From the NCBI RefSeq assembly GCF_026571515.1, contig NW_026857358.1:186001-250000 (forward strand): a stretch of 64,000 nucleotides of DNA, given 5' to 3'. The stretch comes from Ruditapes philippinarum (taxonomy: Eukaryota). The notes beneath the pieces were generated by a model, which made no database searches, was not told the DNA's origin, and saw only the letters and a list, made by a program, of their open reading frames with translations. How positions within the stretch are numbered: position 1 is the first letter of the stretch; each line of letters opens with the position of its first letter. A program made the position numbers and the translations under genes. Shown here piece by piece: positions 976 through 56,826 of the stretch.

Positions 976-1110
976 TAGCTATTTTTTTAACTCTTACAAA
1001 ACGTTAAATTTCGAACCAGCTTCAAAGATTTGGAAAATAATTGTTTTAGGTTTTTGACATTTAATCTAACTTCTTTGTTTATTGGATTTTGTGGTTTGCA
1101 CTTCTTACAG

Positions 1111-1265
1111 ACATGATTGCTATACCAAGCTTTATATCTGGTGCTATGGAACACTGGGGTTTGATTGGGTTCCGTGAGGTAAACATGCTGTATGATGAAA
1201 CACAAGCGTCCGCCGCTAACAAACAACGTGTCGCTGTGGTAGTCGCACATGAAATTGCTCACATG
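1111..1265 (+). CDS. ENPEP: ENPEP-like exon a ([17 protein letters not shown]...HEIAHM)
   Basis: cttcttacAG acceptor, GTccgt donor; exopeptidase motif and HEXXH zinc motif. Confidence 0.93.
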
Positions 1266-4200
1266 GTCCGTATATTAAGCAACACTTAAACTTTAAATTT
1301 ATTTTTATAGCTATAAACATTTTTATTTTAGTTGGATTGTTATAAATGCTTACACTGTGTCGCGTGGCCAGCCTCTTGAATTAACCAGTTTCATAATATT
1401 ATGTGGAAACATGATTTATGATTGCAGTACAGATCGAACTCATAACCGCCAGACACCTTAACTAAAAGGCTTACAGCTTCCTTTTAACATTTTATTAAAG
1501 ACTACATTTGCTAAAAATACCATTTATTTTATAAACTACCAGCATATAAAGAACAATTTAATTACATTTTTTGCTGTTGCTGTTTTTTTATTATTATTAT
1601 TCTTAAACAAATTGAAGGTTTGTGCTTTTATAAGTAATTCTTGTCATGTTTACATTTTAANNNNNNNNNNNNNNNNNNNNNNNNNNNNNNNNNNNNNNNN
1701 NNNNNNNNNNNNNNNNNNNNNNNNNNNNNNNNNNNNNNNNNNNNNNNNNNNNNNNNNNNNNNNNNNNNNNNNNNNNNNNNNNNNNNNNNNNNNNNNNNNN
1801 NNNNNNNNNNNNNNNNNNNNNNNNNNNNNNNNNNNNNNNNNNNNNNNNNNNNNNNNNNNNNNNNNNNNGTTTTAAATGTATATGTTATATATCAGTGGTT
1901 TGGAAACATAGTAACAATGGATTGGTGGGATGATTTATGGCTGAATGAAGGGTTTGCAAGTTTTGTGGAATATATTGGTGTTGATGAGACTGAACCAGAC
2001 TGGGAAATGGTAATAAATTGTTCAAATCATTCGCTTGATTCATAATCCTTACCCTCCTGCATTTATGTAATGAACAACACATTAAAAAATCAGGGATCTA
2101 AATATTTCACAAATTCTGAGCTACCAACATAATAGCTTGGTCAGCGGATTTCATGCTATTCACTTTCGGCTCCAGCAGGTTAAAAAATTTAAATTGTTCA
2201 ACATATTTTTTATTTACACTTTAAAATATGAATATTTGTTTAAATGAAACTTTGTTTGTTTTATTTTGCCACAAACTAGTTTATAGAAATATTTTCTGAA
2301 CTCATGTTATTTCAAATCTTCAAATGATTCTTATGTAAGCATTTCTTTCTGAACCCTTTTTAGTGAACCCCCAATTCTGTTTTATGTATGTAATTGTAAT
2401 GTTTTGTCAATCATGCAGTCATATCGTTAACATATAGATCAGATGGTAGTTGATGTAATGCTTTGTTAATCACGAAGTCATATCGTTAACAGATAGATCA
2501 TATAGTAGTTGATGTAATGCCTTGTTAATCACAAAGTCATATCGTTAACAGGTGGATCAGATAGTAGTTGATGTAATGCTTTGTTAATCACGAAGTCATA
2601 TCGTTAACAGGTGGATCATATAGTAGTTGATGTAATGCCTTGTTAATCACGAAGTCATATCGTTAACAGGTGGATCAGATAGTAGTTGATGTAATGCTTT
2701 GTTAATCACGAAGTCATATCATTAACAGATAGATCAGATGGTAGTTGATGTAATGCTTTGTTAATCACGAAGTCATATCGTTAACAGATAGATCAGATTG
2801 TAGTTGATGTAATGCTTTGTTAATCACGAAGTCATATCGTTTACAGGTGGATCAGATGGTAGTTGATGTAATGCTATGTTAATCACGAAATCATATCGGT
2901 AACAGATATAGCAGATGAAAGTTGACGTAATGCTTTGTAACAGATAGATCACATAGTAGATGTTGTAATGTTTTGTTACTCACGAAGTCATATCGTTAAC
3001 AGATGGTAGTTGATGTAATGCTTTGTTAATCACGAAGTCATATCGGTAACAGGTGGATCAGATGGTAGTTGACGTAATGCTTTGTTAATAACGAAGTCAT
3101 ATCGTTAACAGGTGGATCAGATGGTAGTTGATGAAATGCTTTGTTAATCACGAAGTCATATCGGTAACAGATAGATCAAATGGTAGTTGTTGTAAGGCTT
3201 TGTTAATCACGAAGTCATATCGTTAACAAATGGATTAGATGGAAGTTGATGTAATGCCTTGTTAATCACGAAGTCACATCGTTTACAGATATATCAGATG
3301 GTTGTTGATGTAATGCTTTGTTAATCACGAAGTCATATCGTTAACAGATATATCAGATGGTTGTTGATGTAATGCTTTGTTAATCACGAAGTCATATCGT
3401 TAACAGGTGGATAAGACGGTAGTCGATGTAATGCTTTGTTAATCACGAAGGCATATCGTTAACAATGAATCAGATGGTAGTTGTTGTAATGCTTTGTTAA
3501 TTACGAAGTCAAATCGGTAAAAGGTAGATCAGATGGTAGTTGATGTAATGCTTTCTTAATCACGAAGTCAATTCGTTAACAGATAGATCACATAGTAGAT
3601 GTTGTAATGTTTTGTTACTTACGAAGTCATATCATTAACAGATGGATCAGCTTGTAGTTGATGTAATGCTTTGTTAATTTCGAAATCATATCGTTAACAG
3701 ATAGATCAGATGGTAGTTGATGTAATGCTTTGTTTATCACCAAGTTATATCGTTAACAGGTGGATCAGACAGTAGTTGTTGTAATGCTTTGTTAATCACG
3801 AAGTCATATCGTTAACAGGTGGATCAGACAGTAGTTGATGTAATGCTTTGTTAATCACCAAGTTATATCGTTAACAGATGGATCAGATGGTAGTTGTTAT
3901 GCTTTGTTAATCACGAAGTCATATCGGTAACAGGTAGATCAGATGGTAGTTGATGTAATGCCTTGTTAATCATAAAGTCATATCGTTAACAGGTGGATCA
4001 GATAGTAGTTCTTAAAATGCTTTGTTAATTACGAAGGCATATCGTGAACAGATAGATCAGATGGTAGCTGATGTAATGCTTTGTTAGTCACGAAGTCATA
4101 TCGGTAACAGGTAGATCAGATGGTAGTTTATGTAGTGCTTTGTTAATCACAAAGTCATATCGGTAACATGTGGATCAGATGGTAGTTGATGTAATGCTTT

Positions 4201-7200
4201 GTTAATCACGAAGTCATATTGTTAACAGATGGATCAGATGGTAGTTGTTGTAATGCTTTGTTAATCACAAAGTCATATCGGTAACATGTGGATCAGATGG
4301 TAGTTGATGTAATGCTTTGTTAATCACGAAGTCATATCGTTAACAGATGCATCAGTTTGTAGTTGATGTAATGCTTTGTTAATAACAAAGTCATATCGTA
4401 AACAGATAGATCAGATGGTAGTTGTTGTAATGCTTTGTAAATCACGAAGTCATATCGGTAACAGATAGATCAGATTGTAGATATTGTAATGCTTTGTTAA
4501 TCACGAAGTCATATCGTTAACAGGTGGATCAGATAGTAGATGTTATAATGCTTTGTAAATCACGAAGTCATATCGTTAACAGGTGGATCAGATGGTAGTT
4601 GATGTAATGCTTTGTTAATCACGAAGTCATATCGTTTACAAATAAATCAGATTGTAGATATTGTAATGCTTTGTTAGTCACGAAGTCATATCGTTAACAA
4701 GTGGATCAGATAGTAGTTGATGTAATGCTTTGTTAATCACGAAGGCATATCGTTAACAATGAATCAGATGGTAGTTGTTGTAATGCTTTGTTAATCACGA
4801 AGTCATATCGTTAACAAATGGATCAGATGGTAGTTGTTGTAATGCTTTGTTAATCACGAAGTCATATCGTTAACAGGTAGATCAGATAGTAGTTGATGTA
4901 ATGCCTTGTTAATCACGAAGTCACATCGTTAACAGATATATCAGATGGTAGTTGTTGTAATGCTTTGTTAATCACGAAGTCATATCGTTAACAGGTAGAT
5001 CAGATAGTAGTTCTTGTAATGCTTTGTTAATCACGAAATCATATCGTTAACAGATGAATCAGATAGTTGTTGATGTAATGCTTTGTTAATCAGGAAGTCA
5101 TATCGTTAACAGATAGATCAGATTGTAGTTGATGTAATGCTTTGTTAATTACGAAATCATATCGGTAACAGATAGATCAGATGGTAGTTGATGTAATGCT
5201 ATGTTAATCACGAAATCATATCGGTAACAGGTAGATCAGATGGTAGTTGATGTAATGTTTTGTTAATTACGAAATCATATCGGTAACAGGTAGATCAGAT
5301 GGTAGTTGATGTAATGTTTTGTTAATTACGAAATCATATCGGTAACAGATCGATTAGATGGTAGTTGATGAAATGCTTTGTTAATTACGAAATCATATTG
5401 TTAACAGATCAGATGGTAGTTGATGTAATGCTTTGTTAATTACGAAATCATATCGTTAACAGATGGATCAGATGGTAGTTGATGATGTCAAGCCTGTCAT
5501 GGTTACAGACGCTGGAGTCAACTCACATCCTATTGTAGTACCAGTCAGCCATCCTAACCAGATCACTGAAGTTTTCGATGCCATTTCTTACAGCAAGGTC
5601 AAATACATGTGTATAAACTTACCGCGTGAAACGTTCAACCATTTACTTGTTTATCTAATCTATACTCGACTTCTCTTTCCTTCATATCAGTGAAGACTTC
5701 CAGATTCTGTGATCGAACATACATCCAATGTTTTCAGATTCTTGTGCATTAAGTTCGGCACTGTTCAGTGTTTTTTTTACTTGGATTTCATATGCATATT
5801 TAGTTTTTTATATAACTGAATTACTGATGTTTGTTAATAGAATTGCAACACATCATTTACAAGGATTAGTTTTGGTGTTTAGGTTTAGTTCGTTTCTTCA
5901 TGTATTTATTGACAAATAATGGATATGTTTTACAGACAACATTTATTTCATTCCTCAGAGTTCATGTGTGCCCAAGACGTCACAGATTTATGTTTTTCAT
6001 TAAGCGTTGTATCTCTGTATATTTTAATCTCTTCTTAACTTTTCAGGGGGCATCGATTCTCCGAATGTTACAAGAGATGATGGGGAGCGGGGTGTTTTTT
6101 GATGGTATATCAACATATTTGAAGAAGTACGAATGGTCAACAGCCACTACTAATGACCTCTGGGACGACCTCGGACAGGTTAGCAAATGCTTATCTGTAA
6201 CTATCTGTAAAGTCATTAGACAATGTTTAGGGTTTCCCGTTCCATAACATATTTATGTAACCCTTTTTGATAGGTTTACATAATGTTGTATAGTTTTTAT
6301 GCGTGTAAACTTTATTTTTATCATATGTTTAACTACAGAAAGTAATAGAAACTATATGAATCGTTAAAGATAGAACAACAAAATGATCAGAGCAATAACA
6401 AAATATTATTTTCAAATTTGGACATGAATGTTACATGCGGAATAAAAGTATGGAAGAAATTACGCGATTCATGTACCTTTATAAGCTTTATACGCCTGTT
6501 TGACCTGGTAAGAGCTGTAAGTAGGTTGGTGGTGTAAATGCCACGTTATAAGATGTTCAACCGTTTTTCAACCCGCCACGTGCAGACTTCGCTACTAGAT
6601 AAGTTTTTGTTAAGAAAAGAACATTATCTCTAAATTATTAGGTGCCCGTGGCTGGATACAGTGTGAAGGAGGTCATGGACACATGGACCTTACAGATGGG
6701 TTTACCTTATATAAACGTGACCTATGTAAATAGTGGTAGCAAAACACGTGTCACAGCGTCTCAAAAACGTTTCCTGGCAGATAAAAACATGAACTACGAC
6801 GAAAATGAGTCTCCTTTTAGGTAATTTGAAATATAAATAGTGTATAAGTTTGTTTTCAATATTGTTTTGTTATACTTGGTTTTCATTAACGTTGAACAAA
6901 AACATACATAAGAACCCAAGGTCGCTCCCTACCGGTCGCTTCCTTTTAGGTTATTAATTGTTAAATTCACTTTATAAACACTAACATGTACGTATTTCAT
7001 TCCATGGTACGGTTTCTATTTGTAAAAGAACTAATAATAACAGCTCATATCTGAGTATTTTCTGATTCCTTTATTAAATCAAATCATGAGAATGCAATAA
7101 AAGGGTACAGATTACATTAAATGAGTACTTCTGATTTTTCTTTTATTTTAATCATCGCTGGTGTGTGCATTAGGCTGCTATCAGAGAGCTCCAACGAAGC

Positions 7201-10200
7201 CAATCTGTACTTTAACCTCCATTTCTTTGTCTGGGTATCTTCTACATGTTGCCTTTGCTTTTCACATTTTCCTTCTCCCTATTGGGTGTACACCTCGTGA
7301 CAACTTTGGGGATGACTGTCTTTTCCATCTGCAGTACATGACCAGTCTAACAATGCATTCTGCATTTTATCTATTTTGAAAGTGTACTAATATGTACTAA
7401 TATGTTTTGTTAATTGTTAACAGATATAAATGGTTTGTACAGCTGGATTATATAGACAATGGTGAATATAAAATAAAGTGGATCACAAAAGATGACGATT
7501 CTGGTAAATATTCATTTTCTTTTATCACAGAGCTATTATATAAGTCTCTGCTTTTACATCTTAAAAATCATTATTTGTAGGTGTAGGTAACCACAGGCAT
7601 TTTATATCTTGTAATATTGATAGGAAAGTTTTTAAGTATCAATCAATGGTTAATATTTTGTATATTTTCGATGTACATAACTTTAGGTATTTTCATATCC
7701 TCTGACATTTGTAGATAAAGGGAGGAACCCCTTGGGTTTTTCCTATCACATTTTAAGTCAAATCTTCAAAAGCTTCTAGATTTACATTTTCATGATAATG
7801 ACGATGCTATTTCATGATGATTTTATGCGTTAGTTGTAGTTATACTCGTATTCTTAATACATTGCAATTCATCGTTTTCCCAACATATACAAATGTATGT
7901 ATTAATTTAGTTTCATTTGATGTGAACACTGACATGAGCCAAGGGAACGCTTTAATCAAGTTCAATGTGAATGACACCGGTTTCTACAGAGTGAACTATC
8001 CCCCGGATGTTTGGAGAAGAATAGCAGACGCTCTGGAATCTCAAGGACCAGCAGCTGTGTGTATAGTTTATCATTGATTGCTTTTTTAGAGACAAAAACA
8101 AACAAAACACCAAAGAATCAATTTACATGTTGAGAAACATATTTACATGTTGAGAAAATATAGACATTGTGACGAAAAACAATTCATCTGCTGAATTTCT
8201 TAAATGGACATGTGCAGTATGCATGTTATCCATATAAAGGGACGAACTTTAAAGTTAATCAGCTAACAGTATAGAGCCTGGTCAGACTTCACGGATGTGC
8301 AAGATGGCGTGGCTCCATATTTTGGCAAAGGTTACACTTTTTGGTCAGCATGGTGAGGGCTAATGTACATCAAAGATTAATAATAATGATTCTCTCATCT
8401 TCTAGTAATCGATGTAATTATTAACGATTTCCAATGTACAATTCAGTTCATCTCACGTGCCATCAACTTATAACTCGAGCTTTTTTACAATATCATACTT
8501 TATGTTAAACAGAAGATTATATAGCACAATCTTAAAGAAATTAAAAACTAATGAAAGATGAACTTGAAAGACAGCAGTGGACCTGTTTTGTGCATTATTT
8601 ATCCTTCTCTTTCATATTCTCTAACCTTCAGATTTCTACAACGGATCTTTTCTGTCATAAAAGTTATACTTGAGATACCGTCTTATTTTTTTTCTTCAGA
8701 TACCTTACCCTGCTGATAGGACAGGTCTTGTAGACGATGCGTTCAATCTAGCTCGTGCTGGATATATCAGTTATGAATTAGCGTTAGAAATGACCAAGTA
8801 TTTGGACAAGGAGTACCATCATTTACCATGGGACTCCGCTTACAGTGGTATAACATATATAAAAGATATGTTCATCACCAGCGGACATTTTGACTCTCTA
8901 AGGGTATGTATACAAAGAACAAATGCACAAAAAATGAATAGTAAGTCGTCAAATTTTGTACTGAATGTAAGCTGGATCATTTCCGTTTATTCTGATCCAG
9001 AAGTTGCTTCATGAAGTTTGAAATAGGCAATTTATATTGTCTGATAGTTTCTGATTATTCTTATGCATCTAAAACTTGCTGGTCTCTTTTAGAAATATTT
9101 TGCAAAGAAAGTACGTCCAGTGATGGATCGGCTTACATGGGAAGATGGTGATTCACATCTTGACAAGTGAGTTTATATACTATTTAACCCTCTAACAGTC
9201 TATAGTTAGTTAAACGATTTAAATAAAAAAAGCCAGAAAGTGAAGTTTGGCCTCGTTGTAGATTGTGGCACGAATCTGCTATAATTGTGACAAACGCTCA
9301 GGGGGTTAAATTTGAAATGTTTTTTTTTAGTTTTCTTGTTCGAAATGTTTTCTTTTTGTTGCTTATCTATATTAAACAATGCCGAGTTCCAGTATTTCTG
9401 ATTTAATCGGGCCAATCATTTTTCACTTAAATAACTTTAATGTTTGTTTTGTACAGTTTAGATCAAAGGCTTGACTGTTAAACGTTTATATTTTTGAATA
9501 AATGGAATGGTATGAGTTTTAAAATGTATGTATCGATACAATGTAAAATGTTTTCTAATTTCAGATTAATGCGATCTAATATAATACAACTAGCGTGTGA
9601 ATTTGCAGATACATATTGTCTTGGAAATGCAACTATGAAGTTTAGAGGATGGATTGACAATGGCGAATTGTATGTCAATCTATAATTTGAGATTTTGTTT
9701 CAATATTTAATCTTCATATTGGTATATTACAACGATCGGTTCAAATGGAAACATTTGTTAAAATGTAACCTTTAAGGCTTTCGGACCTCAGTTGAGTTCT
9801 CCTTATATGATAAGAGGCTGAACGGGTAGTGGGAGAAAAACCAAATGCAAGAGAAACTTAAATCAATATATTTATCATCATCTTTAATGGTTTCATTTCT
9901 TTTCATATCCGAGTAAACCATTTGTTTTCTATATTTCAGCATATCTCCTAATATAAGGACATACGTATACAAGTACGGCATGAGTTCAGAGGGTACAGAA
10001 TCAGACTGGAACTTTATGTGGAACAAATATTTACAGGAAACTGTACCTCAGGAAAAGATCAAACTGCTGTATGGTCTAGCCAATACCAAACATGTCTGGC
10101 TACTAAACAGGTTAGAATTTTTTTTTTATAAAGAACAAGAGTGTCACTTTATCAAAGAATATCCGTCACAGATACTCAGTCCTACCAGACTGAATATTTA

Positions 10201-13200
10201 CAATAAAATCGCACAATTTATGATGACGAGATATTTACAAAGAAACCTAAATTCTGTACACATCACTATACCTCTCTATGTTTTCCTCACTCACCAATAT
10301 TGCACACCTCTAATTTGTTAATACCTGCTCAAATGAAAATTTGATTGGCATCATTTGTACATTACAGATACCTTGAATTCAGCAAAAATACGACGATGAT
10401 TGGCTCACAGGATTTCTTCACGGTTGTCACGTATATTTCGAGGAATCCAGTTGGAAATCCACTAGCATGGAACTGGGTCAGAGCTAATTATGACTATATT
10501 GTGAATAGGTAAGAATGTTCGAAACATGTGACCCTGGTTCATATAGATATGGCGATGTCATGCGGCCGTTCGTTCGACCGTCTGTCAAACTTTTGTATAA
10601 GCATAAAACTGAAACTATTTGAGTCATTAATTTAAAATTCATTTGAAGTTACAACTCATTGAAGACACGTGCATTGTCGAAAGAACCATAACCCTCTAGT
10701 TATTGCCCCGGCATTTCAACTTAAACATATACATAGATCTCATTAGGGAAAAGTGCAATGCTTAGAACCATAACACTCTTTTTCATAATTGTGACCCCTT
10801 GTTGTCGTCATACTTAATTTTTGTAAGTGGGGCACAGTTCAAAAGGTATTAACTTGAACCTTCATAGATTGATAGATCACATATAGCCAGAAATGTTGCA
10901 GTGCTTAAAAACAGAACATTTTCCATAATTATGAAGTAATTGCTCTTTGTATTTTTCATACTGAACTGAAAAAGGGATGTAGCAACTTGAAGCTTCATAT
11001 CAATGAGGAAATTTGAATTGTTTAAGGACCATAACTGTCTTTTGTATTTTTTTAAATAATTGTCCTTTGTAATTTTTTCTTGTTTATTTTTTTGGTTAGG
11101 AGCATAGCTAAAAAAATATCTAAAACAATCATATCCTTTTCTTTTTCTGTTCTCTTTTCTGTAAATCTAGCCTAACCTGTAATCCTGTTATTTAACATAA
11201 TCAAATTTCTATCAATCCTGAATATTTTACTTGTAGAATGATGATAATGTCAGTGTATGCACATGCTGATCGTGGTTAGTCTCTTTCTAGCTCCTGTCAG
11301 CGATAAAATATTGAGAAACCTGTCCCTCCATGATCGCACATTTTGATAGCCAAAGGAAATTATCTTTATTCATGCATATCACTGTACTACTTCCCATCAC
11401 GCCTAATAATTACATATTTAGTGTTTTCTCAACTGATAATCGAAGCAAACACAATATTATGTACCTTACTCCCCACTTGCACTTTCACCAGACATTTTAT
11501 GCTTGCTCTTTCAGTCTCTGATTATGTCTGTTGGGTATTGTGCCATATAGACAGAGCAACATCCATCTAAACCCAGGTCCAGAGATTCAACATCCACTAG
11601 TTTTATTTCTTTATTTCTTTCGTTTATATCTAATACAATGTCAGAAATATCAGTATTAATTGAGAACAAGAATAAGGATAAGATAACGACAAGATAAACA
11701 ACTTGGGAGCTGAGTTTGGTATGTTTGAAGTCCTTGCTTTTAGTGAAACGTGGCTCAACTCTTAACATACCTTGTAATGAAATAATACTCAAAAACTTTC
11801 ATGGGCCGATAGGACAGAGAATTGTTATGGTGATGTCAGTTTTAATTAAAAAAAAATACTTTACACTACGTTAGAAGGTTTGATCTTGAAAATAGAAGTT
11901 TTTAAACACCGACTGGAATCAGTTGAAAACTGATGAAATCAACAGCTACATTTCCTATTTTAGTAACAAACTCCTAGAGCTATCTAAATCGGTCATCCTA
12001 ACGAGACAAGTAACTGTTAAGCCAAACGATGTGCCACGGGTTATAACAGATATAAAGAAACTAATACACTAGCAAAACAAATAAAGCACAAAAGGCGCTG
12101 AATTTGTTTGGGTCTTAGAATGTCAGGAAGGTGAAGGTTGTGAGAATATAATCCAATTTGTTTTTGTATAGTGCCACCAATGCTGTTTCTAGTGTTATAA
12201 ATGTAGTAAATTGGCTATAAGGCTAATTGCAACACTGATATTCAATGTTTATTTGGCTTAAACAATTTATAATAAAAAAAACGAACAAAAAAAACACAAA
12301 AAAATATGAGTTGCCTTAACTGGGATTTAAACTCCAGACTTCTGGCTTCCTAAAAGAGCGTGTAACCCCTCGACCACGGGGAAGTTATAAGATAACAACC
12401 TGTAGAAAACCACATTATTCTAGATTAAGGTTTGTTACCATATTAATTTCGAGATATTTTGTTCACGGTAAACCTGTTGTTTAACACTGATGTAAATAAT
12501 CACGGACCTTAATATAAGCATTTATATCTGTAAAGAATTACACAATATTAGAAATCTTCGACCAATCGGGAACTATTTCCCCAGGAAGGCTTGAAAAATT
12601 AATGCGCCTGTCATTTGACAATCTTTACGCAGTGATCTCACCTTAATTTTTCGGCGTTAGTGTACTTATAAAGGGAAGTAACCGCTTCGTGGAGTTCGGA
12701 CTTCTTTCGGTATTTGCAAATAAGCATATTAGGGTCTGAAATTTCGCTACTAATATTTGTTTGGTCTGACGACCCAAACAAATATAAACTACCATCACAA
12801 GAATTCATACCACTGGTACAAAATTCAGATTACTCCGTAATGAAGTACTCACACTTATATACACGCACGGTTAAACATACATAATTACTTCTTACAAATG
12901 ACCGCCAGATTCTCTCACGTCAGACTCAACTATACATGACTGGTAAAAACTTGTCAAATCTTTCATCTGTCCGACTGACTGACAAAAAAAAAATTCGCTT
13001 ATATTTTTATCAACAATGAAATACCTGTGTTTTTTACTTCCACCTACTGTAGGTGAAACTTCCAGGTTCAAACTACGCAATGCTACGAATATTCAGCTTA
13101 TTTGAAAAACGATTATCTCCTTTTTTTAATCTAAATGTTTTCCTACCACCTGCCCTGATACAATGGAACGCCCTTCCTTAGTTAAACAAATTCACTTTCA

Positions 13201-27419: not shown

Positions 27420-30118
27420 AAGGGTTGTTTTGTCTTTTTTTTTATATTTGGATATTTTGGAACTAATTTTTTCAAACCTTTTGCCTGTTTATTTTGCACT
27501 TTTTTTTATTTAGATATGTTGGGAGACTAGTTTTTTTCCAAACAATGTTGCCTAGTTGTTGTTTGTCTTGTTGTATATTTGGATATGTTGGGAGACTAGT
27601 TTTACAAAATCTGTTGCCTAGTTGTTGTTTGTCTTGTTGTATATTTGGATATGTTAGGAGACTAGTTTTTTCAAACTCTGTTGCCTAGTTGTTGCTTGTC
27701 TTGTTTTATATTTGGATATGTTGGGAGATTAGTTTTTTTCAAACTCTGTTGCCTAGTTGTTGTTTGTCTTGTTGTATATTTGGATATGTTAGGAGACTAG
27801 TTTTTTCAAACTCTGTTGCCTAGTTGTTGCTTGTCTTGTTTTATATTTGGATATGTTGGGAGACTAGTTTTTTCAAACTCTGTTGCCTAGTTGTTGTTTG
27901 TCTTGTTGTATATTTGGATATGTTAGGAGACTAGTTTTTTTCAAACTCTGTTGCCTAGTTGTTGTTTGTCTTGTTTATATTTGGATATGTTTGGAGACTA
28001 GTTTTTTCAAACTCTGTTGCCTAGTTGTTGTTTGTCTTGTTTTATATTTGGATATGTTGGGAGACTAGTTTTTTCAAACTCTGTTGCCTAGTTGTTGTTG
28101 TCTTGTTGTATATTTGGATTGTTGGAGACTAGTTTTTTTCCAAACAATGTTGCCTAGTTGTTGCTTGTCTTGTTGTATATTTGGATATGTTAGGAGTACT
28201 AGTTTTTTTCAAACTCTGTTGCCTAGTTGTTGCTTGTCTGTTTTATTATTTGGATATGTTGGGAGACTAGTTTTTTCAAAACTCTGTTGCTAGTTTTTTA
28301 GCTCTGTTGCTTGTCTTGTTTTTATATTTGGATATGTTGGGAGAACTAGTTTTTTCCAAACTCTGTTGCCTAGTTTGTTGTTTGTCTTGTTGTATATTTG
28401 GATTTTGTTAAGGAGACTAGTTTTTTTCAAATTCTGTTGCCTAGTTGTTGTTTGTCTTGTATTGTATATTTGGATTTGTTGGGAGACTAGTTTTTTCAAA
28501 ACCCTGTTGCCTAGTTGTGTTTGTCTTGTTGTATATTTGGATTATGTTTGGGAGACTAGTTTTTTTCAAACTCTGTTGTCTAGTTGTTGTTTGTCTTGTT
28601 GTATATTTTGGATATGTTGGGAGACTAGTTTTTCAAACTCTGCTTGTCTAGTTTGTTGCTTGTCTTGTTTAATATTTGGATATTGTTGGGAGACTAGTTT
28701 TTTCAAACAATGTTGCCTAGTTGTTGCTTGTCTTGTTTTATATTTGGATATGTTGGGAGACTAGTTTTTTCAAACAATGTTGCCTAGTTGTTGCTTGTCT
28801 TGTTTTATATTTGGATATGTTGGGAGACTAGTTTTTTCAAACTCTGTTGCCTAGTTGTTGCTTGTCTTGTTTTATATTTGGATATGTTGGGAGACTAGTT
28901 TTTTTCAAACTCTGTTGCCTAGTTGTTGTTTGTCTTGTTGTATATTTGGATTTGTTAGGAGACTAGTTTTTTTCAAATTCTGTTGCCTAGTTGTTGTTTG
29001 TCTTGTTGTATATTTGGATTTGTTGGGAGACTAGTTTTTCAAACCCTGTTGCCTAGTTGTTGTTTGTCTTGTTGTATATTTGGATATGTTGGGAGACTAG
29101 TTTTTCAAACTCTGTTGCCTAGTTGTTGCTTGTCTTGTTGTATATTTGGATATGTTAGGAGACTAGTTTTTTTCAAACTCTGTTGCCTAGTTGTTGCTTG
29201 TCTTGTTGTATATTTGGATATGTTGGGAGACTATTTTTTTTTCAAACTCTGTTGCCTAGTTGTTGCTTGTCTTGTTGTATATTTGGATATGTTGGGAGAC
29301 TATTTTTTTTTCAAACTCTGTTGCCTAGTTGTTGCTTGTCTTGTTGTATATTTGGATATGTTGGGAGACTAGTTTTTTTTTCAAACTCTGTTGCCTAGTT
29401 GTTGCTTGTCTTGTTGTATATTTGGATATGTTTGGAGACTAGTTTTTCAAACTCTGTTGCCTAGTTGTTGTTTTTCTTGTTGTATATTTGGATATGTTGG
29501 GAGATTAGTTTTTCAAACTATGTTGTCTAGTTGTTGCTTGTCTTGTTGTATATTTGGATATGTTAGGAGACTAGTTTTTTCAAACTCTGTTGTCTAGTTG
29601 GTTGCTTGTCTTGTTGTATATTTGGATATGTTTGAGACTAGTTTTTTTTTCAAACTCTGTTGCCTAGTTGTTTGTTTTTTTCTTGTTGTATATTTGGATA
29701 TGTTTGGAGATTAGTTTTCAAACTTATGTTGATCTAGTTGTTGCTTGTCTTGTTGTATATTTGGATATGTTAGGAGACTAGTTTTTTCAAACTCTGTTGC
29801 CTAGTTGTTGTTTGTCTTGTTGTATATTTGGATATGTTGGGAGATTAGTTTTTCAAACTCTGTTGTCTAGTTGTTGCTTGTCTTGTTGTATATTTGGATA
29901 TGTTTGGAGACTAGTTTTTTCAAACTCTGTTGCCTAGTTGTTGTTTGTCTTGTTGTATATTTGGATATGTTGGGAGATTAGTTTTTCAAACTCTGTTGTC
30001 TAGTTGTTGCTCGTCTTGTTGTATATTTCGATATGTTGGGAGACTAGTTTTACAAAATCTGTTGCCTTGTTGTTGCTTGTCTTGTTGTATATTTGGATAT
30101 GTTAGGAGACTAGTTTTC
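27420..30118. repeat. ~67-bp G/T-rich minisatellite (~40 copies)
   Basis: Unit CTAGTTGTTGYTTGTCTTGTTGTATATTTGGATATGTTGGGAGACTAGTTTTTTCAAACTCTGTTGC with a variable T-run. Confidence 0.96.
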
Positions 30119-36952: not shown

Positions 36953-37761
36953 TTGTTTTGCATGATGTCGGTATATAAGATTGTTTTTGCATGATGTCGG
37001 TATATATTAAGATTGTTTTTGCATGATGTCGGTATATAAGATTGTTTTTGCATGATGTCGGTATATAAGATTGTTTTTGCATGATGTCGGTATATAAGAT
37101 TGTTTTTGCATGATGTCGGTATATAAGATTGTTTTTGCATGATGTCGGTATATAAGATTGTTTTTTTCATGATGTCGGTATATATTAAGATTGTTTTTGC
37201 ATGATGTCGGTATATAAGATTGTTTTTGCATGATGTCGGTATATAAGATTGTTTTTGCATGATGTCGGTATATAAGATTGTTTTTGCATGATGTCGGTAT
37301 ATATTAAGATTGTTTTTGCATGATGTCGGTATATAAGATTGTTTTTGCATGATGTCGGTATATAAGATTGTTTTTGCATGATGTCGGTATATAAGATTGT
37401 TTTTGCATGATGTCGGTATATATTAAGATTGTTTTTTTGCATGATGTCGGTATATAAGATTGTTTTTGCATGATGTCGGTATATAAGATTGTTTTTGCAT
37501 GATGTCGGTATATATTAAGATTGTTTTTGCATGATGTCGGTATATAAGATTTTTTTTGCATGATGTTGCGATGTATATAAGATTGTTTTTGCATGATGTC
37601 GGTATATATTAAGATTGTTTTTGCATGATGTCGGTATATAAGATTGTTTTTGCATGATGTCGGTATATAAGATTGTTTTTGCATGATGTCGGTATATATT
37701 AAGATTGTTTTTACATGATGTCGGTATATAAGATTGTTTTTACATGATGTCGGTATATAAG
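36953..37761. repeat. 29/32-bp minisatellite (~27 copies)
   Basis: GCATGATGTCGGTATATAAGATTGTTTTT with a periodic +3-nt variant (..TATATTAAG..). Confidence 0.96.
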
Positions 37762-40700
37762 AAAAGCATTGATCACAGTGACTTACATTATCGAGCGACT
37801 AATGATTTGGATGATTTATGGACTTGAGAATAAAATTAATGCATTATATTAGTTTGTTTTCGACGTTGAACCAAAAAAACTTTAGTAAATGATTCAGATA
37901 TCTTCAATGTTTTAACTGGGATTTGAATTAATTTTTTTATAGGAATTTAAGTCTCAGAATGGAGAATGGCGGGAGATCTTGTTAAAGACTTGCTATCACG
38001 CTGAAAGTGACTCAGGAAGTTAAGCTTCAAGCTACCGTTAGAAACAAAGCAACATGGTTGATATAAGCTGAAATTTATATGAATCTCTTGCTGTAAAAGA
38101 TAATCAAATTGTAGATATAAAATTCGTATTTACGCAATAAAAGCATAAATAAATTATGTCTACTATCAAACTTTGGTAAGCAGATAAGGCGTTGTCACAC
38201 GGCGTTGGATATAAATTGCATCAGATAAATGAAGCAAACAGATTGCATACCAGATAGTGGCATGCATACTGGGCGTCATTGTCTTGCGAAATATCAATCT
38301 TTAGTACATTAATATTTGTCTTGTTAGATTGTTATCAGAACCCTCATAGCTTATTGTGTCGTGGGTTCACTGTAAATCCATTATTGGGCTCGAGTGTGCC
38401 AATATGGATTACCGTCTGCAACAGTTTCTCGGTTCGGCAGACGACACGGAGGGAAAACAGGCGTGAACATCACAGGTCTTCCATTATCCTTCGATATATG
38501 TAATACTACAATCAAACGTTTTTACACTGTTCTAAACCCATTTGATAAAACTTGCAGCCTAAGGATTTAAATAAAACCGCTTTAGTGATTTGGTCTTTAG
38601 GAGCAGACGACACAATTTCAAAGTCATTAGACAAGAAGAGAGATTGGAAATAAAGGTTTCGGAAACATCAGAGACTAGTGGTGTAATTAAGTATGATAGA
38701 TACGTAGAATATCAGATATTTCACAAATACACGTCCCGTACCAGACGACATCTAGACCTTGTGCTATCACTAGTTACACAGTGTTTCCATAGCTAATTGG
38801 CGGATCTGTATACCTTATTATGCATCAAAGGGTTTTCTTATTACAATTCGAAGTAGACGGGCGACTCTTGAGAAAAGAGTATTTTCAAGTGTATAACATT
38901 AAGGTTTTATTTGTAAATGGGTAATAAACAGGTTGTTTGTAAGTACTTTCGAATAACTTGCATAAAAATAAAAACACTTCATAAGTATGAAGCAATGATT
39001 AAACACCTTTGTGTTAAAATTGGCGGGAAAAAAGAAATGCAGAAAATATATGGCGCTAATTATTACCAGGAATTAAATCACTTGAAAACGTCTACAAGTT
39101 TTGTAAGTGCCAAGAGTCTTTTAAAATGTAATTCTAAAAGAATCCATTCATGTTCTCTTGAAATTATTACAAATTAGCCGAATAAACAACCGAACAAATG
39201 ACTTTGAAATTGCCGTGACTTGCTGAGATATGAAGAAATGTTATATTTTAAAATGTTTGAAATACTAAGATGTGGTGGGGTAATTATGTAAGACCAGTCT
39301 TTATTTTTCCCCTATTTTGCATATTTAATGATCTCACAACTTCATTATTTTATATGACAGGAACGAAGCGGACGGCAAACAAATAGAAATCGTACTGCTA
39401 AGGTACCAAGTTATGCACTATAGTTGTTTTAAAATTCAAACCAAGCAGCTATGGACCTTGAAACGAATCATTTAACAAATCATTGTCATTCTTCTGCCCC
39501 TTTTAGTTTACCTTTGTTTTTGTGTAATAGATGGTAGCAGACGATAGAAGATGTTACAACTTTTATGTTGGTATACTGCTCACATCGCTGAAAATACTTG
39601 TCAAAAAAGTGGCGTGTTTCTTTTTTTTTTTCTCTCTTTTTTTTTTTTTTTTTTTTTTTGAGAGCAGACTTGCGAAGTTGTAGAAAGTAAGTGATTTTGA
39701 CAGCAGACATGGCGTCCTGTGGTCAAACATGGAGCTTTCAACACACCCCTCTCAAAAAGTTGTAACTTTAGCAGTTAAATGTATAGAAAAATTAGCCAGT
39801 TATTCCAGCAGTTATAAACCTGTCCTGTTGAATATATGCCAGATTCATCATTTCAAAACGCAGAGAAAAATGATAAACATACTTAGACGCTTACAAATTG
39901 GAAAAAACGAGCTTTGATTCAGCAGTGATATTGTCGGAAATTATTGATTTAGTTATATTATATCATAATTAACATGAATCATATTTGTTATTATCTGTCT
40001 GTTAGTAATGGTATTTTACAGACAAATTTAATACTTTTTTACGTTATTTTCAAAAATGATATAAGTTTAATATAGACATACAGCAGCATGGTCCATAAGT
40101 CATTTAAAATGTTAGAATGAACATATAAAACTATATTCTACTATTACACAAGATAACATAGACACATGATTGAGTTTTCCAGTATGCCCACTATAGAAGA
40201 GTTACAAATCAGGATTTGTGAAGGTGTATAGATTAGCCCAATGATATTCTCTGATAACACACAGATAAAATATTTGAGATAATTCAGGCAAACATGGATA
40301 AAAGACAATCTCAAAGTTTCATTCATGGCTTGAAATATTTTCAGTAACGTTTCAGCGTTCCTGGATTAGTGCACGATGAACGCTAATCCCTCGAGTCAGT
40401 TATAAACTACAATTTAACAGAATTCGACAATCGCTATGAAAACATTGGTTTATGCTATATGATAGATCGGGATTAAGGCTAAAATTGACCGTGACAGTTT
40501 TGAAATTAATAATATCAGAATTTGTTATCGCGAGCTCCTTGTCCACACCACAGTTTCCGGTCAGTTTTGACACTCATGTTGAAGTGGCCACTATGCTAAC
40601 CTGCCCTATGTGTCTGTTTGCTTCATATAGATTTACATTAATTTTGCAATTACTTCAAAATAAACCTATACACAATTCAAAAACATGCTTAAAAATGTCT

Positions 40701-43875: not shown

Positions 43876-45842
43876 ACATAATTCACGTTCTCTACGACAT
43901 GATTCACGTTCATTACGACATGATTCACGTTCTCTATAGATCATGGCATGATTCACGTTCTCTAAGACATAATACACGTTATCTACGACATGATTCACGT
44001 TCTCTTCGACATGATTCACGTTCTCTACGACATGATTCAGGTTTTCTATAGATCATGACATGATTCAGGTTATCTACGACATGATTCAGGTTCTCTATAG
44101 ATCATGACATGATGTACGTTCTCTACGACATGATTCACGTTCTTTACGACATGATTCAAGTTCACTACAATATGATTCAGGTTCTCTAAAGTTCATGACT
44201 TGATTCACGTTCTCTACGACATGATTCACGTTCTCTGCGACATGGTTTACATTCTCTACGACATAATTCACGTTCTCTACGACATGATTCACGTTCTCTA
44301 CGACATGATTCATGTTCTCTACGACATGATTTACATTCTCTACGACATGATTCACGTTGTCTACGACATGATTCAGATTCTCTACGACATGATTTACGTT
44401 TTCTTCGACATGATTCACGTTCTCTACGAAATGATTCACGTTCTCTACGACATGATTCAAGTTCTCTACGACATGATTCAAGTTCTCTACGACATGATTC
44501 ACGTTCTCTACGACATGATTCACGTTTTCTATAGATCATGACATGATTCACGTTCTCTAAGACATGATTCACGTTATCTACGACATGATTCACGTTCTCT
44601 ACGTCATGATTCACGTTCTCTACGACATGATTCAGGTTTTCTATAGATCATGACATGATTCAGGTTCTCTACGACATGATTCAGGTTCTCTACGACATGA
44701 TTCAGGTTCTCTATAAATCATAACATGATTCACGTTCACTACGACATGATTCAGGTTCTCTATAGATCATGACATGATGTACGTTCTCTACGACATGATT
44801 CACGTTCTTTACGACATGATTCAAGTTCACTACAATATGATTCAGGTTCTCTATAGTTCATGACATGATTCACGTTCTGTACGACATGATTCGCGTTCTC
44901 TAAGACATGGTTTACATTCTGTACGACATGATTCACGTTCTCTACGAATTGATTCAGGTTCTCTACGACATGATTCAGGTTCTCTACGATATGATTCACG
45001 TTTTCTACGATATGATTCACGTGTTCTACGACATGGTTCACGTTCTCTACGACATGATTCAGGTCCTCTACGACATGATTCACGTTCTCTATGACGTGAT
45101 TTATGTTTTCTATAGATCATGGCATGATTATTCACGTTCTCTACGAATTGATTCAGGTTCTCTACGACATGATTCACGTTCTCTACGAAATGATTCACGT
45201 TCTCTACGTCATGATTTACGTTCTCTACGACATGATTCACGTTCTCTACGACATACATATGTTTTCTACGACATGATTCACGTTCTCTACGACATGATTC
45301 AGGTTCTCTCTAGATCATGACATGATTCAGGTTCTCTACGACATGATTCACGTTCTCTACGACATGATTCACGTTCTCTACGACATGATTCACGTTCTCT
45401 ACGACATGATTCACGTTCTCTACGACATGATTCACGTTCTCTACGACATGATTCAGGTTCTCTACGACATGATTCACGTTCTCTACGACATGATTCACGT
45501 TCTCTACGACATGATTCACGTTCTCTACGACATGATTCAGGTTCCCTACGACATGATTCAGGTTCTCTACGACATGATTCAGGTTCTCTATGACATGATT
45601 CAGGTTCCCTACGACATGATTCAGTTTCTCTACGACATGATTAAGGTTCCCTACGACATGATTCACGTTCTCTATTACATGATTCAGATTCTCTACGACA
45701 TGATTCAGTTTCTCTACGACATGATTCAGTTTCTCTACGACATGATTCAGTTTCTCTACGACATGATTCAGTTTCTCTACGACATGATTCACGTTCTCTA
45801 CGACATGATTCAGGTCTTACGACATGATTTACGTTCTCTACT
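43876..45842. repeat. 21-bp minisatellite (~85-90 copies) with periodic 10-bp insert
   Basis: CTACGACATGATTCACGTTCT; insert TAGATCATGA; source of the MIHVLYD / NHVVENV / RESCRRE ORFs. Confidence 0.96.
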
Positions 45843-46419
45843 ATTTTTTTTTGTATTAAGAACATATCGTTCTGTCTAAGAAAACAATTTAGAAAATATA
45901 TAAGCCAAGAAAATAGACCATTACTTTTGAAAGGTATACTCTTAATTTGCTCGTTTACTAATACATGTATTTACATGGAAACATAATTTTCTAGTTTACT
46001 AATACATGTATTTACATAGAAACATAATTTTCTGTGTGTGTCTATTTACATTAATTGCAATTTAAAATGATGATTTGAAATCATAATTTTTTTATCGTCC
46101 AATCAAAAGCACATTATGTTCAAACGAAAATTTCCTTCTTGGATGTAACAGTATGTAGTATTGACTCATATAAAAACTAATCCTATGAGTTGTACATTTG
46201 CAATAAAACATAGACGAAAGCAAGGATGGTCCAGGTATAATTGGCCAATGAGCAACTTCTTGGAAACTATAACGGGACATACACAATAATAAAACGCTTT
46301 TGAGAAAGGAAAGCATTTCTGGGAAATAATGGGCCTTTAAAAAGTATACATTGTATGTTGTTCTATATCTAAATTGGGTTTTACGCTAAACCTATTAAAT
46401 TTCTTATATGTGCTTCCAT

Positions 46420-49147: not shown

Positions 49148-56826
<7,679 letters not shown>

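What the first reader, a model, noticed from the sequence alone, without database searches (positions are those of the whole stretch)
2396..5483. A satellite made of a splice junction: ~50 tandem copies of acceptor + 21-nt in-frame microexon + new donor in front of an ENPEP exon
Seen: the 59-bp unit is the last 38 nt of the intron (GTAATG...TTAAT...TTAACAG, with a branch-like TTAAT ~25 nt before the AG) plus the first 21 nt of coding exon c (ATG GAT CAG ATG GTA GTT GAT = MDQMVVD). Each unit junction reads GAT|GTAATG, a plausible 5' donor, so most units look like a complete phase 0-0 seven-codon microexon. Copies are diversified ([35 protein letters not shown]) and only the final unit continues into the real exon. 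Reading through a unit without using the donor hits GTA ATG CTT TGT TAA, a premature stop. Established: tandem duplication across a splice site is a proposed route to intron/exon gain, and a 38-nt intron is below the usual animal minimum, so adjacent units probably could not both be included. Inference: this is either a large set of decoy acceptors skipped by exon definition, a source of variable 7-aa insertions just after the zinc-binding helices, or a copy-number-tuned NMD rheostat on ENPEP expression.
Basis: partly seen in the sequence, partly recalled or inferred. Interest (0 to 1): 0.85.

Follow-up and report, generated by a model that had tools for sequence, protein, structure and literature searches.

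The report
Splice-junction minisatellite ("mirage") in aminopeptidase intron
A 3.1-kb tandem repeat made of about 52 copies of an intron end plus the first 21 bases of the next exon really sits in a mollusc aminopeptidase gene, but the assembled mRNAs skip all of it, so it is a large example of a known kind of repeat ("mirage") and not a new splicing device.

Summary
Window 2396-5483 is a 59-bp tandem array of 53 units in register. Each unit is the last 38 nt of an intron plus the first 21 nt of the next exon of an M1 (APN/ENPEP-like) aminopeptidase gene. The array occurs only at this locus in the 1.4-Gb mollusc genome.

Public DNA from other runs covers both array borders and several internal pieces. 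Copy number could not be verified.

Transcript contigs from two independent RNA studies join exon b (ends 2009) directly to the last acceptor (5463). They remove all 3,453 nt as one GT..AG intron, and no contig uses an array acceptor or donor.

The units look unconstrained:
- 12 of 52 have lost the AG and 5 have lost the GT.
- 3 carry in-frame stops.
- Only 9 keep the exon's ATG codon.
- The exon-derived part varies about twice as much as the intron-derived part.

This is the known "mirage" class of exon-boundary minisatellite, described in amphioxus Adh3, globins, PGBD5 and TnC. It mirrors the human F7 intron-7 VNTR. This scan had already filed six such arrays elsewhere in the same genome. 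I found a further one, of the donor type, in a paralog.

Rare NMD-sensitive use of the decoy sites is not excluded. Interest is low to moderate: it is an unusually large natural test case for 3' splice-site choice.

The parts
1107..1265 (+). Exon a of the M1 aminopeptidase gene. It carries GAMEH (in place of GAMEN) and the zinc motif HEIAH, and ends ...AHM|gtccgt.
   Evidence: PF01433 positions 26-78, 55.5 bits; translation; the loose ends of the RNA contigs at 1895 read ...GCACATGAAATTGCTCACAT.
1896..2009 (+). Exon b ([38 protein letters not shown]), which holds the third zinc ligand in NEGFA. Its donor is gaaatg|GTAATA.
   Evidence: PF01433 positions 76-121; RNA contig pieces 1895-2008.
2010..2395 (+). 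Unique 5' part of the b-c intron, 386 nt. This is the ancestral intron apart from its last 38 nt.
   Evidence: Paralogs have an intron of 257-1248 nt at the same position.
2396..5424 (+). 52 non-final units of the 59-bp array: decoy branch-like TTAAT, AG acceptor, 21-nt exon-derived piece, GT pseudo-donor. All of it is spliced out in the assembled mRNAs.
   Evidence: the joint 2008->5462 skips 3453 nt in X15 and X19.
5425..5483 (+). Final unit, the authentic junction: the last 38 nt of the intron (5425-5462) and the first 21 nt of exon c (5463-5483).
5463..5597 (+). Exon c, 45 codons, phase 0-0, [45 protein letters not shown]. Its donor is agcaag|GTCAAA.
   Evidence: Gapless match to human ENPEP 363-406; RNA contig pieces 5462-5595 and the joint to 6045.
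6047..6178 (+). Exon d ([12 protein letters not shown]...).
   Evidence: RNA joints 5595->6045 and 6176->6640; PF01433 positions 153-209.
6642..6820 (+). Exon e. Further exons with ERAP1_C matches follow, to about 16039.
   Evidence: RNA contig pieces 6640-6820; tblastn map; PF11838 matches at 8670-9014 and 9980-10321.

Best explanation
This is a 'mirage': an intronic minisatellite born when a 59-bp segment spanning the 3' splice site of an M1 aminopeptidase exon was duplicated in tandem. Slippage or unequal exchange between the short direct repeats ATGT(A/C)A at its two ends is the likely cause. Ordinary minisatellite turnover then expanded it to about 52 copies. Because every added copy lies upstream of the authentic junction, the whole array is intron. 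The spliceosome pairs the exon-b donor (2009) with the most downstream acceptor (5463) and removes all copies in a single 3,453-nt intron. The likely reason for that choice is exon definition. Only the last AG is followed by a full 135-nt exon with a real donor. Each decoy AG is followed by 21 nt, a weak GAT|GTAATG and a 38-nt gap that is too short to be an intron. Any use of a decoy AG with read-through meets a stop within 15 nt and shifts the frame, since 59 is not a multiple of 3, so such products would be removed by NMD. Shown: the anatomy, single-locus occurrence, the dominant splice, and the lack of constraint on the units. Inferred: the origin by slippage, exon definition as the reason for the choice, and neutrality.
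For: Array and register. The exon-derived 21 nt are ancestral coding sequence: exon c aligns without gaps to human ENPEP, and seven loci of the genome (six intron-bearing copies and one intronless) carry homologous sequence, the six intron-bearing copies with an intron at the same position. The first look of the own-genome search found one candidate region, this locus, and all 13 matches lie in its array. RNA: a 3,297-nt contig in X19 (study P9, depth 23.6) and a 1,397-nt contig in X15 (study P6, depth 195.5) both join 2008/9 to 5462/3 with GT..AG ends. No other joint was listed among the 44 X15 contigs laid. No constraint on units: AG kept in 40/52, GT in 47/52, ATG first codon in 9/52, three in-frame stops, three deleted units. 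The minor-allele fraction is 0.119 in the exon-derived part against 0.052 in the intron-derived part, and the G of AG is among the more variable intronic positions. Typical minisatellite behaviour: the edge unit is the most diverged, and there are local subfamilies (units 48-53, and the pairs 2/4, 3/5, 31/33). Background: this genome is full of minisatellites, with three other arrays of 0.8-2.7 kb in this window and about a dozen in 60 kb of paralog loci. One of those (L017, 40 bp x 30) spans the donor of the homologous exon. Precedent: PMC3087553 and PMC3902484 report that mirages do not disturb splicing; PMC1557585 shows silent pseudo-donors in the F7 VNTR.
Against: Contigs show only the dominant isoform, so rare or NMD-degraded products from decoy sites would not be seen. 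In X15 the b-c intron and the array have somewhat more contig depth (about 4-25) than the next two introns (about 0.6-4). That could mean slower removal, though summed depths over a repeat are unreliable. The pseudo-donor GAT|GTAATG is as close to consensus as verified donors of the same gene (ATG|GTAATA, TAG|GTAATT), so the decoys are not obviously dead. The only raw-read 'RNA' run laid (X22) behaved like genomic proximity-ligation DNA, so no read-level junction counts exist.
Confidence: 0.75

Rival explanations
1. Unproductive-splicing decoy array. A fraction of pre-mRNAs use an upstream AG, with or without the pseudo-donor. This yields frame-shifted or stop-containing transcripts that NMD removes, so array length tunes aminopeptidase output or slows intron removal.
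For: 40 decoy AGs share the branch-like TTAAT and the tract of the true site. The pseudo-donor resembles verified donors. Read-through meets TAA within 15 nt. Intron and array depth in X15 is mildly higher than in the neighbouring introns.
Against: No contig in two RNA studies carries such a joint, even though intronic contigs at about 2% of exon depth were assembled in X15. The units decay freely, the AG included. Published mirages and the F7 VNTR leave splicing undisturbed (PMC3087553, PMC3902484, PMC1557585).
Confidence: 0.15
2. Microexon cassette. Array units are included as 21-nt phase 0-0 microexons and add variable 7-residue inserts after the zinc-binding region.
For: Most units have AG, an open 21-nt frame and GT.
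Against: No inclusion is seen in the mRNA contigs. Adjacent units are 38 nt apart. There is no coding constraint: the exon-derived part is the more variable one, stops occur in 3 units, and 12 AGs are lost. The insert would fall inside a conserved, gaplessly aligned stretch of the catalytic domain.
Confidence: 0.03
3. Recursive-splicing ladder. The 19 units that read AG|GT act as ratchet points, so the intron is removed stepwise.
For: 19 of 52 units read CAG|GTG or CAG|GTA. An earlier first-stage note on this same stretch made the same point.
Against: The intron is only 3.4 kb. The tract before the AG is 50% pyrimidine, and the regenerated donors GTGGAT and GTAGAT are weak. No intermediates can be seen in contigs. 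The A/G variant at that position behaves like the other subfamily markers.
Confidence: 0.03
4. Assembly artefact. The array exists, but its length or unit order is a product of mis-assembly.
For: The assembly has 15,874 contigs. Short-read DNA contigs of X1 leave several array bins uncovered, and many reads differ from the assembly by 1-10%.
Against: X1 DNA contigs span both borders (1869-2518; 5411-6900) and three internal pieces match perfectly. X22 reads cover 28 of 30 bins. Fourteen DNA(?) runs, from four samples of three studies, hold 0.44-0.53 of the sampled words, more than the 0.39 that the non-array part could supply. Units differ by about 12%, which makes collapse or inflation less likely.
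Confidence: 0.04

Closest known systems
'Mirage' minisatellites of amphioxus (Adh3: Canestro et al. 2002, cited as ref. 68 in PMC3087553; globins BflGb6/BflGb9: PMC3087553; PGBD5 and TnC: PMC3902484)
   Same: They are tandem repeats whose unit spans an intron/exon boundary. BflGb6 duplicates the 3' end of an intron plus the 5' part of the next exon, exactly as here. Many units keep AG/GT signals, normal mRNA splicing is not disturbed, units are 81-100% alike, and edge units escape homogenisation.
   Different: This one is in a mollusc, not a cephalochordate. It is far larger: about 52 units and 3.1 kb, against 3-6 units in the globins. Its units are older, with a mean identity of 0.88. Length polymorphism and somatic instability, shown for Adh3, could not be tested here.
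Human F7 intron 7 37-bp VNTR (PMC1557585)
   Same: It is a minisatellite whose terminal unit contains the authentic splice site, so identical pseudo-sites follow in tandem and stay silent. The site next to the real exon is the one used.
   Different: F7 repeats the 5' splice site (5-9 copies), and the most upstream site is chosen. Here the 3' splice site is repeated about 50 times and the most downstream is chosen. The donor-type counterpart is present in paralog L017. The F7 pseudo-sites were shown by mutagenesis to be functional; here nothing has been tested.
Intron gain by tandem duplication across AG|GT proto-splice sites (Rogers' model, as discussed in PMC3087553)
   Same: A duplication that includes a splice junction creates new AG...GT pairs that could define a new exon or intron.
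   Different: No new intron or exon has been recruited here. The copies lie inside the pre-existing intron and are removed with it.
Intronic VNTRs that affect splicing (e.g. ABCA7, PMC5954066; title and abstract only)
   Same: Both are large intronic minisatellites inside a gene.
   Different: The ABCA7 VNTR is reported to affect splicing, with a disease association. No such effect is shown here.

Membership tests
Mirage (exon-boundary minisatellite) | Head-to-tail tandem repeat with a minisatellite-sized unit | tested here: met
   Period 59, 52 copies, 82% matches; 53 units in register.
Mirage (exon-boundary minisatellite) | The unit spans an authentic intron/exon boundary, and the real junction is the terminal unit | tested here: met
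   The last unit (5425-5483) holds the acceptor used in RNA. Its 21 exon bases encode residues that align to human ENPEP.
Mirage (exon-boundary minisatellite) | Regular mRNA splicing is kept despite the duplicated splice signals | tested here: met
   Contigs of two RNA studies join 2009|5463 only. This holds for the dominant isoform; rare isoforms are not excluded.
Mirage (exon-boundary minisatellite) | Length instability or polymorphism between haplotypes or individuals | tested here: inconclusive
   Base differences between runs are seen inside the array, but no copy-number joints were listed in DNA runs X1 or X22. Short contigs cannot size a 3-kb array.
Mirage (exon-boundary minisatellite) | Concerted evolution inside the array, with diverged edge units | tested here: met
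   Unit 1 is the most diverged complete unit (0.85 to the final unit). Units 48-53 share the TTACGAAATC variant with the true junction. Neighbour pairs reach 0.97-0.98. There is no higher-order period.
M1 zinc aminopeptidase (gluzincin; APN/ENPEP-like) | Peptidase_M1 catalytic domain and ERAP1-like C-terminal domain | tested here: met
   PF01433 exon matches over the cut-off at window 1107-1265, 1887-2024, 5454-5618 and 6020-6199. PF11838 matches at 8670-9014 (over the cut-off, 56.7 bits against 38.2) and at 9980-10321 (33.9 bits, below the cut-off).
M1 zinc aminopeptidase (gluzincin; APN/ENPEP-like) | HExxH...E zinc site and the GxMEN exopeptidase motif | tested here: inconclusive
   HEIAH and WLNEGFA are present, but the exopeptidase motif reads GAMEH, not GAMEN. 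The effect on activity is unknown.
ENPEP (glutamyl aminopeptidase) orthologue | One-to-one orthology with vertebrate ENPEP | not tested
Only exon c was compared: the best solved match is 4kx7 (2e-9), against APN at about 1e-6. The genome holds many M1 paralogs.
Recursive splice sites | Juxtaposed 3'/5' splice sites (pyrimidine tract, then AG|GTRAGT) in a long intron, with detectable intermediates | tested here: not met
   AG|GT is present in 19 units. But the tract is 50% pyrimidine, the donors would be GTGGAT or GTAGAT, and the intron is 3.4 kb. Intermediates are not testable with contigs.

The most novel reading that the evidence does not exclude
The array is not neutral. Its roughly 40 intact decoy acceptors capture a share of splicing events, or delay intron removal, so that array copy number sets the output of this aminopeptidase through unproductive splicing and NMD. 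The many mirages of this bivalve genome would then be a common, heritable, length-variable way of tuning gene expression.
Probability: 0.1. Interest if true: 0.6.

Novelty: new member of a known kind. Interest (0 to 1): 0.3.

Why it matters
It shows that exon-boundary minisatellites, so far described in the papers I found mainly from amphioxus and from single human loci, also occur in a mollusc, repeatedly and at large scale. With about 40 near-identical intact acceptors upstream of the one that is used, the locus is a ready-made natural construct for asking how a spliceosome picks a 3' splice site among equals. In that it is the counterpart of the F7 VNTR, which was used for the same question about 5' sites. 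It also warns annotators that gene predictors may place false microexons or acceptors in such arrays. No new mechanism is needed to explain it.

Tried and rejected
1. Dispersed satellite or transposon origin: rejected. The own-genome search found the unit at this locus only, with the caveat that the tool skips very common words.

2. Raw-read RNA evidence: X22 is labelled RNA-Seq, but it shows no exon enrichment, reads on both strands, no splice joints, and loose ends that start at GATC sites. I treat it as genomic proximity-ligation-like DNA, not as RNA evidence.

4. RNA structure of the last four units: z = -2.3, which is unremarkable for a repeat.

5. Higher-order repeat or distance decay: none found.

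6. The original mirage paper (PMC117041) is not held. It is cited only through PMC3087553.

Exons were searched one by one, by reference.

8. N runs (1661-1868 and others) were left as they are.

Full report
OBSERVATION

The sequence at 2396-5483 is as described. Tandem Repeats Finder gives one array at 2395-5484: period 59, 52.0 copies, 82% matches, score 3385.

A wrap-around alignment to the 59-nt unit yields 53 units in register. Each unit is 38 nt identical or near-identical to the last 38 nt of the intron (GTAATGCTTTGTTAAT.ACGAA.TCATATCGTTAACAG). This is followed by 21 nt like the first seven codons of the next exon (ATGGATCAGATGGTAGTTGAT).

Only the final unit (5425-5483) runs on into the exon. 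The unit junction is GAT|GTAATG. Read-through gives GTA ATG CTT TGT TAA, a stop. Because 59 is not a multiple of three, each unit also shifts the frame.

THE GENE

The exons are those of an M1 zinc aminopeptidase.
- Peptidase_M1 (PF01433) matches over the cut-off lie at window 1107-1265, 1887-2024, 5454-5618 and 6020-6199.
- ERAP1_C matches follow downstream.
- A tblastn map with an intronless paralog of the same genome places exons as far as about 16039.
- Exon a carries GAMEH and HEIAH. Exon b carries WLNEGFA.
- Exon c (5463-5597) aligns without a gap to residues 363-406 of human glutamyl aminopeptidase: DQMVVDDV against DQMLLEDV, E 2e-9. Aminopeptidase N comes next, at about 1e-6.

So the 21 repeated exon bases are ancestral coding sequence, and the array was copied from the junction rather than the reverse.

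'ENPEP' is only the best solved match of one exon. The genome has many M1 paralogs, and I did not test orthology.

All six intron-bearing paralogs examined have an intron at exactly this position, 257-1248 nt long. Here the intron is 3,453 nt, of which only 386 nt are unique sequence.

IS IT REAL DNA, AND IS IT UNIQUE?

The first look of the search of the window's own 1.4-Gb assembly found one candidate region, this locus, and all 13 matches lie within its array. It is therefore not a dispersed satellite or a transposon.

Fourteen DNA(?) runs, from four samples of three studies, hold 0.44-0.53 of the sampled words of 1869-6900. The non-array part could supply only 0.39.

When reads were laid:
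- DNA contigs of run X1 cross both borders (1869-2518 and 5411-6900).
- Three internal X1 pieces match perfectly.
- Reads of X22 cover 28 of 30 bins.

Copy number cannot be confirmed with short contigs. The best DNA holder may also be the sample the assembly came from.

X22 is labelled RNA-Seq. It shows no exon enrichment, reads on both strands, no splice joints, and loose ends that begin at GATC sites. I read it as genomic, proximity-ligation-like DNA and do not use it as RNA evidence.

WHAT THE RNA DOES

In run X19 (RNA, study P9) a 3,297-nt contig of depth 23.6 joins 2008/9 to 5462/3. In run X15 (study P6) a 1,397-nt contig of depth 195.5 does the same. The joint skips 3,453 nt with GT..AG ends. 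Both contigs then join 5597 to 6047 and 6178 to 6642.

No other joint was listed, although 44 X15 contigs were laid. Those included intronic and array contigs of depth 4-25, which I take to be pre-mRNA. So the dominant mRNA removes the whole array as one intron and uses the last acceptor.

Intronic contigs at about 2% of exon depth were assembled in X15. An array-using isoform at that level might therefore have been seen. This is a rough inference only: contigs drop rare variants, and NMD would hide such products.

The b-c intron has somewhat more depth in X15 than the next two introns. Summed depths on a repeat are a weak measure, so I treat this only as a hint.

STATE OF THE UNITS

Of the 52 non-final units:
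- 40 keep AG and 47 keep GT.
- 19 read AG|GT.
- Only 9 keep ATG as the first codon. ATA occurs in 18, GTG in 15 and GTA in 7.
- Three have in-frame stops and three have large deletions.

The exon-derived 21 nt are more variable (mean minor-allele fraction 0.119) than the intron-derived 38 nt (0.052). The G of the AG is among the more variable intronic positions, at 0.82. Nothing suggests selection to keep coding capacity or splice signals.

Mean pairwise identity is 0.878, with no decay over distance and no higher-order period. There are local subfamilies. Units 48-53 share TTACGAAATC with the true junction, and several neighbour pairs reach 0.97-0.98. The 5' edge unit is the most diverged complete unit. 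This is the usual picture of minisatellite turnover.

The pseudo-donor GAT|GTAATG is no worse than verified donors of the same gene (ATG|GTAATA, TAG|GTAATT). The acceptor tract is only 50% pyrimidine. The decoys are therefore not evidently dead. They are simply not chosen.

HOW IT MOST LIKELY WORKS

Origin (inferred): the array ends sit in short direct repeats. The unit junction reads GAT|GTAATG, the array end reads GAT|GATGTCAAG, and the left flank holds ATGTAAT. This fits slippage or unequal exchange as the first duplication, followed by expansion.

Choice of the last acceptor (inferred from the exon-definition model, which PMC1557585 discusses):
- Only the last AG is followed by a 135-nt exon with a real donor.
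- Each decoy is followed by 21 nt, a weak donor and a 38-nt gap, which is below usual intron sizes.
- A decoy AG used with read-through gives a premature stop.

The mirror case is human F7 intron 7. There a 37-bp VNTR repeats the donor, the pseudo-sites are functional but silent, and the site adjoining the exon is used (PMC1557585).

WHAT IS KNOWN

Minisatellites spanning intron/exon boundaries were named 'mirages' in amphioxus Adh3 (Canestro et al. 2002, cited in PMC3087553). They are also reported in globins BflGb6 and BflGb9; BflGb6 duplicates the 3' end of an intron plus the 5' part of exon 2, as here. Further cases are PGBD5 and TnC. The stated result is that they do not disturb normal splicing, although many units hold AG/GT (PMC3087553; PMC3902484).

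My searches found no mollusc report. That is only an absence in the library held.

IN THIS GENOME

This scan has found the same thing before on other DNA of this genome. Two earlier follow-ups (s1-793113, s1-803853) filed six acceptor-type arrays as mirages. An earlier first-stage note on this very stretch pointed out the AG|GT variants, which I confirmed.

I add a donor-type case. In paralog L017 (C6556), a 40-bp array of about 30 units starts 9 nt before the end of the homologous exon c: TATGACAAG|GTAATTTATTAC. Later units read TATGACAAT|GTAATT. So the phenomenon is not specific to acceptors.

L019 has a 30-bp x 4 repeat that starts 5 nt after the exon-b donor. It is a possible weak third case.

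The background rate of minisatellites is very high. Three more arrays of 0.8-2.7 kb lie in this window, and about a dozen lie in 60 kb of paralog loci. With one exon boundary per roughly 800 bp in this gene, a random 59-bp seed would span a boundary about 7% of the time. That is my own rough estimate, but it means chance plus tolerance is enough to explain the array.

VERDICT

The functional readings are not supported, except 'decoys that are skipped'. This is a large new member of a known kind, of low to moderate interest. Its main value is as a natural model for 3' splice-site choice and as a warning for annotation.

Not done:
- Long-read sizing of the array.

Noticed in passing
L017:5064-6270 (G000:C6556, paralogous M1 aminopeptidase): A second, independent mirage of the donor type. 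It is a 40-bp array of about 30 units whose first unit spans the 5' splice site of the homologous exon c (TATGACAAG|GTAATTTATTAC). 24 of the 29 segmented units keep GTAATT. The next exon starts near L017 6313.
   Followed up: partly
L019:7305-7430 (G000:C9230): A 30-bp x 4 repeat that starts 5 nt after the donor of the homologous exon b. The unit end (GAACATGTTTT) loosely resembles the exon end plus donor (GAAATGGTAA). It may be a decayed boundary-spanning repeat.
   Followed up: no
L015:5781-5912 and 6840-6974 (G000:C9298): Two tandem copies of the exon homologous to exon c lie within one paralog, at 50% and 56% identity to the query. This could be a duplicated or mutually exclusive exon, or a remnant.
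   Followed up: no
window 27443-30117: A 67-bp x 39 minisatellite (also read as period 202), 90% matches, with strong strand asymmetry (AT skew -0.5, GC skew +0.36).
   Followed up: no
window 43876-45841: A 21/42-bp array of about 90 units, richer in G+C (0.38) than its surroundings. Because 21 is a multiple of three, it has open frames of 140-185 codons on both strands. There is no Pfam match for 45322-45879.
   Followed up: partly
window 36956-37762: A 29-bp x 27 minisatellite, 92% matches, with long open frames on the minus strand. The one faint Pfam hit is below threshold.
   Followed up: partly
window 49148-49897 (-): An open frame of 249 codons with an OAR motif (PF03826, 5e-8) and the end of a homeodomain. 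It is probably the last exon of a paired-class homeobox gene on the minus strand.
   Followed up: partly
window 1107-1265: The exopeptidase motif of this aminopeptidase reads GAMEH instead of the usual GAMEN, next to a normal HEIAH zinc motif.
   Followed up: no
G000:C4333:80165-80830 (L013): An intronless M1 aminopeptidase open frame of 974 codons in the same genome, with a full Peptidase_M1 match (1e-67). It may be a retrogene. I used it only as a tblastn probe.
   Followed up: partly
run X22 laid on window 1869-6900: This public run is labelled RNA-Seq but behaves like genomic proximity-ligation DNA. Loose ends start at GATC sites, coverage is on both strands, and exons are not enriched.
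   Followed up: partly
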